Below, piece by piece: positions 52,472 to 57,294 of a stretch of 64,000 bases of DNA. The stretch is from assembly GCA_033442325.1 (NCBI GenBank), contig JAWQFM010000021.1:14290-78289 (forward strand), written 5' to 3'. The position numbers and the translations under genes were made by a program. Every line of letters begins with the position of its first letter. The first letter of the stretch is position 1. The notes beneath the pieces were generated by a model. The model ran no database searches and was not told where the DNA came from. It worked only from the letters and a program-made list of their open reading frames with translations. Source of the stretch: Salpingoeca rosetta (taxonomy: Eukaryota > Protista > Choanoflagellata).

Positions 52472-54408
52472 ATGATGTGGGTGCACTCATGTGCTGCTGG
52501 TGGCGCTGCGAGTGGCAATGTTGTGGTGCGGCGCATTGATGTCGAGCCGCTCGCTGCGGCCATCAGCAAGCTGGTCTTGGAGGTAGCGACAGCAGCATGC
52601 CACCCTACAACACTGTCTTTGCCCAGCACACGTAAGTTGCATGACGTAGGGACGCGTGTGGATGTGTGCGTGTGCGTCTGTGTCTGTATGTGTGTTTGCA
52701 TGTGTGTCTGTGTGCGCATGCGTGTACGCGTGTGTGTTTGCATGTATGTTTGCATGTGTGTCTGTGTGCGCATGCGTGTACGCGTGTGTGTCCCTCCCTG
52801 CCTCTGCATCTCTATCTGTGTCTCTCTGTGTGTTCGTGGTCGCGCAGTCCCACCTTTGCTTGGTGACCACCTTGCACCCGCTTTTCTAACACGAGCTGTT
52901 GTTGGTTGACAACAGTGGAGACGTGCGTGGCTGTTGCAGTGTGCATGGACAACGGCGTGGAGTTGGTGGCGAGCGAGGTGGCAGTGATTGAGGCTGGACT
53001 GACGCTTGTGCCAGTCGCACCCGACTGCACGCTGGAGGAAGCTCGCCATCGCATCATCAACACTGTTCCTGTGGTCGCGGCCCTCGCTGATCTACAAGGC
53101 GCCACATCCGCACTGGCTGCGCTGTGCCAAGAGCACGGTATCCCGATCCTTCTTGTGGAAGAACAGTGCTCACGCGATACTGCTGCTGCTGCTAAGGACA
53201 GCGAAAAACAACGTGGCTGCACGTGGTCTCTCTCCCTCCAGCAGCCGCCATCTGCCGCAACACACGTGCACGTTTGCACACAAATAGCCACGATGCATGA
53301 TCACGATGACAGTGGAATCAGCACCAGCACCAGCACATCACGTGGTGGGTGTGCTCATGGCCTGCAGAGGTTGGACAATCACGCGGTAAACGACGACGAC
53401 AACGATGACGACGACGACGACAACCACCACCACCACCACCACCACCACCACCACCACGACGGCGACGACGAAGCTGATGTTAACCACGTGAGCCATATCT
53501 TCTTCACTTCCGGGAGTACGGGTTTGCCGAAAGCCTGCGCAGTGACACGCCGCACATTGCTCGAGGCTGTACATAACCAGCGCACGACATTCAACATCAG
53601 CGCCAACTCTGCTGTGTTCCTCGGCTCCACCATCACCTTCGACCCATCGCTCTGTGACATTTTCATGGCCCGCGCAGCCGACGCTACTGTCGCCGTGGCC
53701 CCGCGGCACCTCATGCTCACGTCGCTGCCGGAGTGCCTGCAGGCAACGCGTGCCACACACATCTGCACCACGCCAACCCTGCTGCAGTCCTACCCACGCG
53801 CGGCACTGTGTCCTGCAACGCTGCCAGCACTGCGCACAGTCGCGCTTGGTGGGGAGCCAATGGCGCCGCTGACGGCTGCGACGTGGGGCACGGCGCCAGC
53901 ACAACACCGATGTCGGCTCTTCAACGTGTACGGCGTCACGGAGTGCTGCGGGTACCAGTCTGCGCTTGAGATTGAAAACCCTGCCTCAGGTGCTATTGCG
54001 CAGCAGGCCCCGGGTGAAAAGCAGCAGCAGCCACACCAACCGCACCAATCGCTGCCCGTGCACCGGTGTGTTGGAGGCGCGATGGGTACAGCACGGCTGC
54101 TGCTGGTCAAGAACCACAAGCACGTCAGCGCCAAGATCACAGCGTTGCTTAACGGTGATGATGGTAGCGGCAGCAGTCGTGGTCGTGGCGATGAAGGATG
54201 TCGTGGAGGTGAGGACGGTTACAGCGGAGATGAGAGTGATGGCAATGCGTGTAGCAGCAACAATGGTCATTCTGACGCTGTTCCAGCAGCACAGCGGCGC
54301 TGGCCCGTGCTGGCAAAGGAGTACGTTGAGGTGGTGTCGCCGTCAACACGTCATGCTGCAACTGGAGAAGTATGGGTTGTTGGAGGACAAATGGGTCTTG
54401 GATACATC

Positions 54409-54441
<33 letters not shown>

Positions 54442-54843
54442 CACACACACACAACATAGTGGCCGCCCGTTTAGTCGCACCAATCGCTGCCCGTGCACCG
54501 GTGTGTTGGAGGCGCGATGGGTACAGCACGGCTGCTGCTGGTCAAGAACCACAAGCACGTCAGCGCCAAGATCACAGCGTTGCTTAACGGTGATGATGGT
54601 AGCGGCAGCAGTCGTGGTCGTGGCGATGAAGGATGTCGTGGAGGTGAGGACGGTTACAGCGGAGATGAGAGTGATGGCAATGCGTGTAGCAGCAACAATG
54701 GTCATTCTGACGCTGTTCCAGCAGCACAGCGGCGCTGGCCCGTGCTGGCAAAGGAGTACGTTGAGGTGGTGTCGCCGTCAACACGTCATGCTGCAACTGG
54801 AGAAGTATGGGTTGTTGGAGGACAAATGGGTCTTGGATACATC

Positions 54844-54880
<37 letters not shown>

Positions 54881-57228
54881 CAACAACAACAACAACAACA
54901 TCATCACTATCAGCCACGCCAGGTACAGCGTTGAAGGGCCCTGCTCGCTTGTTACTGAAACCGCACGCGTCGTTCGTGTATGTGCGTGGGGTTGGCGCCG
55001 CCTACAGAACAGGCGACATTGCACGCACGTGTTCCAGCGACGACCAAGACAATGACGGTGACGAAGACCAGCATGGTGGTGGAAGACGTCTGGTGGACGG
55101 GAGGGCGAATGGCACCATCACCAACAGCAGCAGCAGTACCAGCACCACCAGCAGCAACAACAATAACCACGACAACCACAGCAGCAAAGATGCATCCGCC
55201 AGCAGCAGCAGCACCACCACCGCTGCCAGTGAGTGTGGGCGACTGCAGCTACTTGGCCGGGTGGACTGGCAGGTGAAGTTGCTTGGGCGACGTGTGGACC
55301 TGTGCGGGCTTGAATCGCAATACAAACAGCATTTGGCGCCAGCAGTGGATGCCGTGGCAATCACTGCCGCCAACCAGTGGCTGTTGTGCTGGGTCACACC
55401 AGCAAACGAGCACCACGTGGATACACATGTGTCCACGTGCCGGACTGACGGCGGTGGCGATGGGGTGGACACGTGCCCCCACGGCCTCCCGACAGCACCG
55501 CAACCCCGTCCTGGCGGCAACACAATGGCACTGCATGCAGGGCACGGCGGCACAGCGCAATCGTGTCGAAGGTGTGAGCTGCTGCGGTCAGCGTGTCTGT
55601 TTGTGTTGCGAGCACACATGCCCTCGTACCTTGTTCCCAGAACGATGACGTGCATTCGCACGTTTCCGACCACCTCATCAGGCAAGCTTGCACGCAAGCA
55701 TCTCTGGCGTGCGCAATCCCGTCTTTACCCGGCGCTGTCACCATCACCATCCTCCACATCATCATCATCATCATCATCTCGACCTGATCAGGCTTGCATG
55801 ACATCGGCTGCTGGTGTGGATACGCGGCTGGACACACCTCTGCAACAGCTGATTGCGGATGTGCTGAGTCAGCATTTACCTGTGCCGATGCAATCACCGC
55901 ACGACACATTCGCACAGCTCGGGGGCGATTCCCTGCGCGCCGTTCGCGCCGTGCACGCGCTGCTGGCAGAGATCAACACCAGGCACCACAGCAACGGCAG
56001 TACCAGCACCACCACCACCACCAGCAGCAGCAGCAACAACAGCACGAGCGATGGGGGTGGTATTGGTACGTTTGCTGAACGCGCTGCCATTGCACCCGCT
56101 GTTGTGCTGACATCAACGATTGTGGAGCTGGAGCAAGCCGTGATTGCCGCATTCCCAGATATGGCTCCACTCAACGACTGCAATGACGATGACGATGCTG
56201 ATGGTGGTGTTGATGGCGTGCAGGCGCACAGGGATTCGAGCGGAACAGGCAGCACAAACGGCAGCAGACACCACCCCACCCCCATGACCACTTCACTCAA
56301 TGGTGCGCGGGAGCGTGAGACGCGGCGGCTGCTTGCTTGGGCTGCAGAGAGCAACGACACGGCCGTGATGCAGCTGCTGATACGTGCTGCGCATGGTGGC
56401 GCGACGCCTCTCATGCGCCGCAGGTGTTTGGCTGTCGCCTATGCCGTTGCTTGCAGGCACGGGAGCGATGGCGTGGTGCGCCTCCTCAACCCGCACGTGA
56501 GGTTGGCAGATGTGTGTGAGCACGGATGTACCCCGTTCACGAGCGGCCATACCACCAGCGCCAGCACAGCGAGTGGTACAGCCAGTGACATGAGCGCTGG
56601 CGACAGCACGAGTAACGGCAGCATGATGGCAAATGGTGCTGGCACGGACAGGCCAACACAGCAGCGCCCACTGCACCTGGCGTGCGGGTCGGGGAGTGAA
56701 GCAACAGTGCGGGCAGTGCTGTGCCATCCCGACACGCGCGGCGGCGATGATGCTGTGCGCAGGGACGGAGATGGGATGACTGCGGTGCACCATGCAGCGA
56801 GGGGTGGGGCAGGCACGCGGCTGCTGCAGCTGCTGCTGTCACAAGAGATGAGCAAGAAGGGCAAGGCGACAAGGCAAGCAGCGGCATCGCGCAACAAAGG
56901 CAGCAAGGCTACCAAAGGCGCACACCAGAAGCGCAGTGGTGGCACGTGCACTGTCGGGGACGTGTGTCTGCACATGCGAGACGCGTGGGGACGAACACCG
57001 CTGCACTGGGCGGTCGTGAACGGCCACCGCACGGCCGTGTGTGCACTGCTGGACCATGGGGCCGATGCAACAGCGCGCGACGCAGCTGACGAAACGCCAC
57101 TCATGATTGCAGAGCGCCGGGCGCAGTGCAGGGCAGCGGACCGCGGTGGCCTCCGCCCATCTGTCTTTGGCGACATTGCCACCCTGCTTGGCGGCTCGGG
57201 CAAGACTGTCAAGCTTGCAAGCACCTGA
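52472..57228 (+). CDS. NRPS-like monomodular protein: adenylation domain, PCP/thiolation domain, ankyrin repeats (AASDH-like A domain); interrupted by a 435-bp duplication
   Basis: A-domain cores [58 protein letters not shown] and [11 protein letters not shown] motif FAQLGGDSL (Ser codon 55930-55932). Ankyrins [29 protein letters not shown] and ETPLMIA. One in-phase intron near 52632-52914. Confidence 0.88.
54041..54875. repeat. Direct tandem duplication (offset 435 bp) within the NRPS-like ORF
   Basis: 54041-~54438 recurs from 54476; the junction contains a TAG at 54457-54459. Confidence 0.95.
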
Positions 57229-57230
57229 GC

Positions 57231-57294
<64 letters not shown>

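What the first reader, a model, noticed from the sequence alone, without database searches (positions are those of the whole stretch)
52472..57228. Stand-alone NRPS-like A-T-ankyrin protein with no condensation or release domain
All A-domain cores (including the amino-binding Asp of FDPS and the catalytic Lys of SGKL) and the PCP serine are intact. The C-terminus is an ankyrin-repeat region rather than a C, TE, reductase or PQQ-propeller domain. From recollection, the motif context (VFLxSxxTFDPS, TPTLL, LRxxALGGE, FNVYGxTE) resembles AASDH/ACSF4, an A-T-beta-propeller protein that activates beta-alanine. Inference: the ankyrins dock a partner protein that receives or processes the PCP-tethered amino acid, which would make this a possible protein-aminoacylation or small-molecule conjugation system.
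Basis: partly seen in the sequence, partly recalled or inferred. Interest (0 to 1): 0.78.

Follow-up and report, generated by a model that had tools for sequence, protein, structure and literature searches.

The report
Choanoflagellate adenylation-carrier-ankyrin enzyme
This is a real gene of the choanoflagellate Salpingoeca rosetta (PTSG_07767, annotated only as hypothetical) for an enzyme that should activate a small amino acid, hang it on its own swinging arm and end in ankyrin repeats instead of a release domain; it belongs to an unstudied family found in many marine protists, but this copy carries a perfect 435-base tandem duplication that I could not check against reads.

Summary
Window 52472-57228 (+) is exactly the CDS span of S. 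rosetta PTSG_07767. It encodes an NRPS-type adenylation domain with cores A2-A10 identified, a carrier domain with its serine, and about seven ankyrin repeats. It has no C, TE, reductase or propeller domain.

It is not the AASDH orthologue: S. rosetta has its own (PTSG_06811, with the ACSF4 beta-propeller). It is one of at least 19 A-T-Ank proteins from choanoflagellates, haptophytes, dinoflagellates and marine metagenomes; ESM Atlas clusters add green algae. Their A domains form one clade (100/99), and their last ankyrin repeat is highly conserved.

The trees do not settle which group is sister.

Partner docking by the ankyrins remains inference; I found no functional study.

It puts a stop in frame, and the annotation bridges it with a doubtful 105-nt intron.

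The scan found the same layout before on other DNA of this genome (s1-438719, chromosome piece C15); I also found a paralogue on C35.

The parts
52472..52631 (+). Exon 1: start codon and first 53 codons plus 1 nt (N-terminal lead-in to the A domain)
   Evidence: The model rebuilt from these coordinates equals P0001. GTAAGT donor at 52632.
52632..52915 (+). Intron 1 (284 nt, GTAAGT...ACAG), filled with GT-rich 54-nt tandem repeats
   Evidence: In the closest homologue's genomic contig (L025) an AG directly precedes the point where homology to P0001 begins, at the same protein position.
52916..54369 (+). Exon 2 as annotated: A-domain cores A2-A5, with a poly-Asp/poly-His insert
   Evidence: Pfam AMP-binding at 59-402 of P0001. 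A3 53500-53529, A4 53638-53649, A5 53923-53943.
54041..54441 (+). Tandem duplication, copy 1 (401 nt, 100% identical to copy 2). It covers the stretch from after A5 through A6 and the poly-Ala run.
   Evidence: the repeat finder D4, TRF period 435, alignment A2. The unit occurs only here in the genome.
54442..54475 (+). 34-nt junction filler between the copies. It holds the in-frame TAG at 54457-54459.
   Evidence: Alignment A2. A 24-nt pattern spanning most of the filler and the start of copy 2 occurs only once in the genome. Unspliced reading ends ...[10 protein letters not shown].
54370..54474 (+). Annotated intron 2 (105 nt, GTATGG...TTTAG). Doubtful: its donor lies inside the A6 codons GEVWVVGG of copy 1.
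   Evidence: Needed to reproduce P0001. The same bases are read as coding in copy 2. No read evidence.
54476..54876 (+). Tandem duplication, copy 2
54475..57228 (+). Exon 3: A6-A10, carrier domain, ankyrin repeats and stop codon, in one open frame
   Evidence: ORF 54493-57228 of 911 aa. Model check.
54799..55695 (+). C-terminal part of the A domain: A6 54799-54822, A7 55003-55017, A8 hinge 55255-55278, A10 Lys in SGKLAR 55678-55695
   Evidence: D719, R800, D802, K806 and K942 are invariant in all 19 family members.
55813..56160 (+). Carrier (thiolation) domain; phosphopantetheine Ser1024 at 55930-55932
   Evidence: Pfam PP-binding 20.9 bits. G1022 and S1024 invariant in the family. The AF2 model gives helices in the carrier region with pLDDT of about 90.
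56308..57225 (+). Ankyrin-repeat solenoid (about seven repeats, interrupted by a low-complexity loop). The last two repeats and the tail are strongly conserved: [14 protein letters not shown] ... AERRAxC ... SVFGDIAxLLGGSGxT.
   Evidence: Pfam Ank families. AF2 model pLDDT above 90 in the repeats. Foldseek hits are DARPins and ankyrins. Tail alignment A4 has 58% mean identity.

Best explanation
PTSG_07767 is the S. rosetta member of a conserved, eukaryote-restricted (as far as my scans saw) family of stand-alone NRPS-like enzymes with the layout adenylation - carrier - ankyrin repeats.

Proposed mechanism:
1. The A domain uses ATP to adenylate a small amino acid. Asp235, the A10 Lys and a pocket of the AASDH type (D-P-x-x-A-G-x-x-Y-K) point to a substrate class like the beta-alanine activated by AASDH. 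This step is inferred from sequence.
2. The aminoacyl group is transferred to the phosphopantetheine arm on Ser1024 of the protein's own carrier domain. This is inferred; the serine is invariant and a PPTase gene is present.
3. There is no condensation, thioesterase or reductase domain, so the thioester must be unloaded in trans. The C-terminal ankyrin solenoid, whose last repeat is the most conserved non-catalytic part of the protein, most likely holds the partner that takes or modifies the tethered group, or anchors the enzyme where that partner is. This step is inference only.

In this assembly the gene also carries a perfect 435-bp tandem duplication between A5 and A6. It is either an assembly error or a very recent event, and it does not change what the ancestral gene is.
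For: Identity and architecture:
- P0001 is identical to the window model.
- Only AMP-binding, PP-binding and Ank are detected.
- The best NCBIfam match is the amino-acid adenylation domain TIGR01733, 144.5 bits.
- The best solved A-domain relatives are NRPS modules such as LgrA.

Family:
- 18 further proteins of 844-1294 aa have the same Pfam layout. They include Prymnesium parvum, Symbiodinium, Durusdinium, and Tara and other metagenome sequences.
- ESM Atlas has two eukaryote-only clusters, of 66 and 60 members, named 'Ligase/ankyrin repeat fused protein'.
- Catalytic and carrier residues are invariant in 19 of 19 members.
- The A domains are monophyletic: 100/99 in the careful tree, 94-95 in the quick trees.
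- The C-terminal 90 aa have 58% mean identity.

Pocket code:
- Family: D-P-[GCT]-[LQCV]-A-G-[VT]-[VGC]-Y-K.
- AASDH: D-P-[IVL]-[QC]-[AF]-G-[LIV]-[STVC]-W-K.
- AASDH is reported to activate beta-alanine and pass it to thiols (Drozak 2014, as cited in PMC4882622).

Other support:
- A PPTase family hit exists in the genome.
- The fusion lies in one ORF, and also in the homologue's single 1228-aa ORF.
- I found no prokaryotic or viral locus joining an A domain to this tail.
Against: - No expression or read data could be obtained.
- The substrate is not predicted by any tool here.
- TIGR01733 scores below its curated cut-off (144.5 against 317.4), and PP-binding is only 0.1 bit over its cut-off.
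- The S. rosetta protein has long low-complexity inserts inside the A domain, including about 70 aa between A7 and A8.
- As assembled, the reading frame is broken by the duplication unless a non-canonical intron is used.
- Nothing identifies a partner.
- Ankyrin repeats could serve localisation or regulation rather than substrate hand-over.
Confidence: 0.6

Rival explanations
1. The S. rosetta copy is broken, or the assembly is wrong here. The 435-bp tandem duplication is either real, in which case the mRNA meets a stop after A6 and the locus is a very young pseudogene in this strain, or a misassembly. In both cases the annotated 1455-aa protein with a repeated 110-aa segment is not what the cell makes.
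For: - The two copies are 401 nt long and 100% identical.
- TAG at 54457-54459 lies in frame.
- The annotated intron's donor lies inside the A6 motif codons, and the same bases are read as coding in copy 2.
- The closest homologue, P0002, has the segment only once.
- The 34-nt filler is unique, which fits a real duplication joint.
Against: - The 911 codons downstream are fully open and all their motifs are intact. Any break is therefore extremely recent or artefactual.
- The annotated 105-nt intron is in frame with GT..AG ends, so it cannot be excluded.
- No reads could be laid.
Confidence: 0.3
2. It is the choanoflagellate AASDH/ACSF4 (beta-alanine-activating enzyme) with its propeller replaced, that is, the orthologue of the animal gene.
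For: - Shared A4, A5 and pocket signature.
- 25% identity over 440 aa, including the carrier domain.
- A tree holding the two families together is not rejected and has the higher likelihood (p-AU 0.74).
Against: - S. rosetta has PTSG_06811, with AMP-binding plus Beta-prop_ACSF4 at 190 bits against a cut-off of 133, and a second such locus.
- P0001 has no propeller.
- The family profile scores bacterial NRPS A domains at 230-250 bits against 164-177 for vertebrate AASDH.
- The careful tree puts the family with bacterial-type NRPS, weakly (89/46).
Confidence: 0.05
3. It is a trans-acting loading module of secondary metabolism. It supplies an amino-acid starter or extender unit to the S. rosetta PKS-NRPS hybrid or similar megasynthases, and the ankyrins act as the docking scaffold.
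For: - A KR-ACP-C-A megasynthase lies on the same contig, about 650 kb away.
- A survey of Symbiodiniaceae notes that monofunctional, probably trans-acting PKS/NRPS domains are often fused to ankyrin, HEAT or PPR repeats (PMC6361889).
- FabD-like acyltransferases with ankyrin repeats are reported in dinoflagellates (PMC8283056).
Against: - There is no physical clustering.
- The family is conserved across distant protist groups with a near-constant pocket code. That fits a shared primary or cell-biological role better than lineage-specific natural products.
- I made no co-occurrence test.
Confidence: 0.15
4. It is an ordinary acyl-CoA or fatty-acyl-AMP ligase whose carrier-like stretch is vestigial.
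For: - Source names such as 'acyl-CoA synthetase/AMP-acid ligase' are attached to metagenome homologues.
- PP-binding scores only at threshold.
Against: - The best family model is the amino-acid adenylation domain, with FadD-type models far lower.
- Asp235 is present in all members.
- The GGDSL serine is invariant.
- The carrier domain folds confidently.
Confidence: 0.05

Closest known systems
AASDH / ACSF4-U26, the animal beta-alanine-activating enzyme (A - T - Beta-prop_ACSF4)
   Same: Both are stand-alone eukaryotic A-T proteins with a non-catalytic-looking repeat domain in place of a release domain. They share the TFDPS, ALGGE and NxYG(V/I)TE motifs and the pocket pattern D-P-x-x-A-G-x-x-aromatic-K. 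Identity is 25% over A3 through the carrier domain.
   Different: The C-terminus is an ankyrin solenoid, not the seven-bladed propeller. The gene is a separate one from the S. rosetta AASDH orthologue PTSG_06811. Pocket position 239 is small (G/C/T) instead of I/V/L, and position 331 is Y rather than W. A8-A10 look like bacterial NRPS rather than AASDH.
Bacterial NRPS C-A-T modules (for example LgrA)
   Same: The A domain matches TIGR01733, and the family profile scores these A domains highest outside the family. The adenylation-thiolation chemistry is expected to be the same.
   Different: There is no condensation, epimerisation, thioesterase or reductase domain. Pro replaces Ala/Val at pocket position 236, and Val replaces Pro in YGPTE. 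The family is eukaryote-only as far as I saw.
Ebony (insect A - T - amine-selecting domain) and Lys2/AAR (A - T - R)
   Same: They follow the same logic: one A-T unit plus one unusual C-terminal domain that decides the fate of the thioester.
   Different: Those C-terminal domains are catalytic; the ankyrin repeats have no known catalytic residues. The Lys2 model TIGR03443 scores only 25.8 bits. I had no Ebony sequence available here, so it was not compared.
ACBD6 and plant ACBP1/2 (acyl-CoA-binding domain + ankyrin repeats); resemblance drawn from my own knowledge, not tested
   Same: A module that carries an activated acyl group is fused to ankyrin repeats that bind a client protein.
   Different: Those proteins bind acyl-CoA non-covalently and have no adenylation or phosphopantetheine chemistry.
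The second S. rosetta adenylation-carrier-ankyrin gene on C15 (earlier finding s1-438719)
   Same: It has the same three-part layout in the same genome: AMP-binding 132 bits, a weak PP-binding of 19 bits, and Ank 56 bits.
   Different: Its A domain is of the FadD/oxalyl-CoA-synthetase type and served as the outgroup in my trees. The conserved tail of the present family was not matched.

Membership tests
ANL superfamily / NRPS-type amino-acid adenylation domain | Core motifs A2-A10, including the A3 P-loop, A4 Asp235, A5 xYGxTE, A7 Y(R/K)TGD, the A8 hinge GRxDxQVK and the A10 Lys | tested here: met
   Motifs read at the listed coordinates. Invariant across 19 family members. Pfam AMP-binding 111.5 bits against a cut-off of 29.9.
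ANL superfamily / NRPS-type amino-acid adenylation domain | Score over the curated cut-off of TIGR01733 (AA-adenyl-dom) | tested here: not met
   It is the best NCBIfam hit, but at 144.5 bits against a cut-off of 317.4. The match is split by low-complexity inserts and the duplication.
Carrier protein (PP-binding, PF00550) | Four-helix domain with a GG(D/H)SL serine for phosphopantetheine | tested here: met
   20.9 bits against a cut-off of 20.8. G1022 and S1024 invariant. Helices in the carrier region at pLDDT of about 90 in the AF2 model. Holo-form not testable here.
AASDH / ACSF4 (beta-alanine-activating enzyme) | C-terminal Beta-prop_ACSF4 propeller (PF13570) | tested here: not met
   No hit in P0001. 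The domain is found at 190 bits in another S. rosetta gene, PTSG_06811.
AASDH / ACSF4 (beta-alanine-activating enzyme) | A domain forms one clade with AASDH A domains | tested here: inconclusive
   The free trees place the family with bacterial-type NRPS at 72 (quick) and 89/46 (careful). The constrained ANK+AASDH tree has a log-likelihood 16.8 higher than the quick free tree, with p-AU 0.74. There is only one, very long, outgroup branch.
AASDH / ACSF4 (beta-alanine-activating enzyme) | Activates beta-alanine | not testable with these tools
Canonical NRPS module | Condensation domain and a release domain (TE or R) | tested here: not met
   No PF00668, PF00975 or PF07993 hit in P0001 at E up to 1.
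Lys2 / alpha-aminoadipate reductase | TIGR03443 equivalog score and a C-terminal NAD-binding reductase | tested here: not met
   25.8 bits against a cut-off of 1030.1. No reductase domain.
A-T-Ank family ('Ligase/ankyrin repeat fused protein' of the ESM Atlas) | AMP-binding + PP-binding + C-terminal ankyrin repeats in one chain; A domain inside the family clade; conserved terminal repeat AERRAxC...LLGGSGxT | tested here: met
   Architecture. Clade support 100/99. Tail alignment with 22 invariant columns. Atlas clusters.

The most novel reading that the evidence does not exclude
The A-T-Ank proteins are the loading half of an undescribed conjugation system. The carrier-bound small amino acid (beta-alanine-like) is handed directly to a protein or metabolite client held in the ankyrin groove, in other words a thiotemplate-driven post-translational aminoacylation. 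The system would be a sister solution to the still unexplained animal AASDH, so solving it in the tractable S. rosetta would also say what AASDH is for.
Probability: 0.1. Interest if true: 0.85.

Novelty: new variant of a known kind. Interest (0 to 1): 0.55.

Why it matters
Stand-alone A-T enzymes with an odd C-terminal domain are few, and each characterised one does something distinctive: Ebony, Lys2, the glycine-betaine reductase ATRR, and AASDH.

The physiological role of AASDH in animals is still unknown. Here the closest living relatives of animals keep AASDH and also have a related family in which the propeller is replaced by ankyrin repeats. That family is widespread in ecologically important marine protists (haptophytes, dinoflagellates, green picoalgae), and I found no functional study of it.

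S. rosetta can be transfected and edited. Substrate, partner and phenotype are therefore directly testable, and the answer could open both the family and the AASDH question.

Tried and rejected

2. The first word search, with the 911-aa exon-3 product, was swamped by low-complexity words and found only the protein itself.

3. The one big profile search, run with the 90-aa tail alignment A4, was a poor choice. Giant multi-ankyrin proteins summing dozens of repeats filled all 150 rows, so it says nothing about the tail's distribution or the family's size.

The repeat with A4 found only ordinary bacterial ankyrin proteins with no A domain nearby. The viral scan found nothing.

5. Rooting the A-domain tree. 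Only one usable outgroup piece could be taken from the genome, and it later proved to come from another A-T-Ank gene with a different type of A domain. The deep branching stays unresolved.

6. Foldseek of the T-Ank model gave only generic DARPin and ankyrin matches.

7. Literature searches for the locus tag, for NRPS in S. rosetta, and for AMP-binding + PP-binding + ankyrin found no study of the family.

8. The promoter/terminator scan is bacterial and irrelevant here.

How sequences were handled: searches used the public protein by its id, or exons by reference. The spliced model was joined only inside a script, to check that it equals P0001, and was not sent to any search tool.
Full report
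WHAT IS THERE

The window is eukaryotic: it has introns, microsatellites and low-complexity coding sequence. Earlier notes of the scan name the genome as Salpingoeca rosetta. That is borne out by a 100% match of the exon-3 product to NCBI 'hypothetical protein PTSG_07767 [Salpingoeca rosetta]' (P0001, 1455 aa).

Rebuilding the model from the window reproduces P0001 exactly. This was done inside a script only, as an identity check:
- exon 1, 52472-52631
- intron 1, 52632-52915, GTAAGT..AG
- exon 2, 52916-54369
- annotated intron 2, 54370-54474
- exon 3, 54475-57228

Pfam finds AMP-binding (111.5 bits), PP-binding (20.9 bits; cut-off 20.8) and five Ank families, and nothing else even at E = 1. 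The best NCBIfam model is the amino-acid adenylation domain TIGR01733, at 144.5 bits, below its cut-off because the match is fragmented. The best solved A-domain relatives are NRPS modules.

The core motifs A3, A4 (FDPS), A5, A6, A7, A8, A10 (SGKLAR) and the carrier GGDSL are all present at the coordinates listed under parts. A6-A10, the carrier and all the ankyrin repeats lie in one 911-codon open frame, so the ankyrins are not a separate gene.

An AlphaFold2 model of residues 975-1455, built with the family alignment, has mean pLDDT 76.7. It shows a helical carrier domain followed by about seven ankyrin repeats, broken by disordered low-complexity loops. Foldseek returns only DARPins and ankyrins.

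Between A5 and A6 there is a tandem duplication. Positions 54041-54441 and 54476-54876 are 401 nt long and 100% identical. They are joined by a 34-nt filler, and a 24-nt pattern spanning that joint occurs only once in the genome.

Read straight through, exon 2 ends at TAG 54457-54459, after a first copy of A6. The annotation escapes this stop with a 105-nt in-frame 'intron'. Its donor, GTATGG, is part of the codons for GEVWVVGG, and the same bases are coding sequence in copy 2. This intron looks like a gene-caller's workaround.

The closest homologue, P0002, has the segment only once.

The duplication is therefore either a misassembly or a very recent event. In both cases the 110 extra residues in the public protein are suspect.

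THE FAMILY

A word search with the A3-A5 core found 18 further proteins of 844-1294 aa with AMP-binding, Ank and, in most or by alignment, PP-binding. The named ones come from Prymnesium parvum, Symbiodinium sp. and Durusdinium trenchii. The rest come from Tara Oceans and other metagenomes and from Logan assemblies.

The ESM Atlas holds two eukaryote-only clusters of 66 and 60 members, one auto-named 'Ligase/ankyrin repeat fused protein', with Chlorophyta as the commonest known phylum.

In the 19-sequence alignment the following are invariant: the A3 loop, FDP of A4, NxYGVTE, the A7 Asp, the A8 hinge R/D/K, the A10 Lys, and the carrier G-x-S.

The last 90 residues are the best-conserved non-catalytic part, at 58% mean identity, with AERRAxC and LGG..T invariant. 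They comprise the penultimate repeat [14 protein letters not shown] and a capping repeat AERRAxC..RP.G.RASVFGDIAxLLGGSGxT.

Scans of one genome per prokaryotic species and of viral contigs, using these two peptide patterns, found no locus that joins such a tail to an A domain. The reach of those scans is limited to the patterns used.

S. rosetta itself has a second, more divergent member on C35:412-417 kb. Its A domain falls inside the family clade, and family profiles detect its carrier and first ankyrin repeats.

RELATION TO AASDH

The genome has two loci that pass the curated cut-off of Beta-prop_ACSF4. One is the annotated PTSG_06811 (P0121: AMP-binding + PQQ_2 + Beta-prop_ACSF4). Its animal relatives are named beta-alanine-activating enzyme / ACSF4. 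PTSG_07767 is therefore not the AASDH orthologue.

- The family and AASDH share TFDPS, (V/L)ALGGE, N(V/L)YG(V/I)TE and TP(T/A)L. The bacterial NRPS fetched here have SFDAS, xAGE, NAYGPTE and LPPS.
- I mapped the ten pocket positions onto GrsA numbering from memory of the PheA sequence, so the mapping is a lead. They read D-P-[GCT]-[LQCV]-A-G-[VT]-[VGC]-Y-K in the family (S. rosetta: DPCCAGVGYK) and D-P-[IVL]-[QC]-[AF]-G-[LIV]-[STVC]-W-K in AASDH.

The trees do not settle the deep order:
- The family is one clade (100/99) and AASDH is one clade (99/86).
- The free trees join the family to bacterial-type NRPS only weakly, at 72 and at 89/46.
- A tree holding the family and AASDH together has the higher likelihood and is not rejected (p-AU 0.74).
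- The single outgroup branch is very long.
- The family profile scores bacterial A domains higher (230-250 bits) than vertebrate AASDH (164-177 bits).

My reading is that this is a distinct family whose pocket is of the AASDH type, and that sisterhood is possible but unproven.

MECHANISM

Shown by sequence:
- an intact adenylation apparatus
- an intact carrier serine
- a PPTase gene in the genome
- no domain that could condense, hydrolyse or reduce the thioester

Inferred:
- The substrate is a small amino acid. Asp235 and Lys517 are present, and the pocket resembles that of AASDH, which is reported to activate beta-alanine and pass it to thiols (Drozak 2014, as cited in PMC4882622).
- The thioester is unloaded in trans.
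- The conserved ankyrin end holds the partner or places the enzyme.

Surveys of Symbiodiniaceae have noted that monofunctional PKS/NRPS domains are often fused to ankyrin, HEAT or PPR repeats and are probably trans-acting (PMC6361889). A dinoflagellate survey reports FabD-like acyltransferases with ankyrin repeats (PMC8283056). I found no functional study of the A-T-Ank family.

THE SAME LAYOUT ELSEWHERE IN THE GENOME

An earlier finding of this scan (s1-438719) described an adenylation-carrier-polyQ-ankyrin gene built on an oxalyl-CoA-synthetase-type A domain. I located what is most likely that gene at C15:157-163 kb. There I confirmed AMP-binding (132 bits, FadD-type by NCBIfam), a weak PP-binding (19 bits) and Ank (56 bits) in one orientation.

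S. rosetta thus has three genes of this layout, built on two different A-domain lineages. This suggests that carrier-plus-ankyrin is a reusable cassette.

VERDICT

The AASDH likeness is real, but this is not AASDH. The family is uncharacterised and widespread. The mechanism beyond loading is inference. The S. rosetta copy needs its duplication checked before any protein work.

Noticed in passing
G000:C18:~578700-584000 (+) (L009) and G000:C18:502492-503931 (-) (L008): There are two AASDH/ACSF4-type loci about 80 kb apart in opposite orientation. Both pass the Beta-prop_ACSF4 cut-off (195.9 and 192.9 bits). One corresponds to PTSG_06811. The annotated protein is 94% identical to the L009 ORF over 73% of it, so the two copies differ or the model is spliced differently.
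   Followed up: partly
G000:C35:~412200-417500 (+) (L006): A second, divergent member of the same A-T-Ank family. Its A domain falls inside the family clade. Family profiles match its carrier and first ankyrin repeats, but the conserved terminal repeat was not found.
   Followed up: partly
G000:C15:~157400-163300 (+) (L040): A third adenylation - weak carrier - ankyrin gene, with a FadD/oxalyl-CoA-synthetase-type A domain. It is most likely the gene of earlier finding s1-438719. I had unknowingly used its A domain as the tree outgroup.
   Followed up: partly
G000:C21:722017-728358 (+) (L007:17-6358): A PKS-NRPS hybrid: KR, ACP, condensation and adenylation domains in one open frame of more than 2100 aa, on the same contig about 650 kb from the finding.
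   Followed up: no
window 57232-57289 and 52663-52821: A (TG)29 microsatellite starts four bases after the stop codon. Intron 1 is almost entirely GT-rich 54-nt tandem repeats.
   Followed up: no
window 53360-53470, 54840-54905, 55020-55250 and 55950-56060 (approximate): There are long homopolymer and low-complexity inserts inside folded domains: poly-Asp/poly-His between A2 and A3, poly-Ala/poly-Thr after A6, about 70 aa between A7 and the A8 hinge, and a Ser/Thr run inside the carrier domain. The closest homologue, P0002, lacks the insert between A7 and A8.
   Followed up: partly
window 57100-57225 (P0001 residues ~1414-1455): There is an invariant Cys in AERRAxC and a near-terminal LLGGSGxT about ten residues from the C-terminus. 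Both are conserved across the core family and I have no explanation for either. The Cys could be structural or an acceptor thiol.
   Followed up: no
L025:950-975: In the genomic contig of the closest homologue (39% GC, Logan SRR14727191), an AG directly precedes the point where homology to P0001 begins. This is the same protein position as the start of S. rosetta exon 2, so the position of intron 1 appears conserved.
   Followed up: partly
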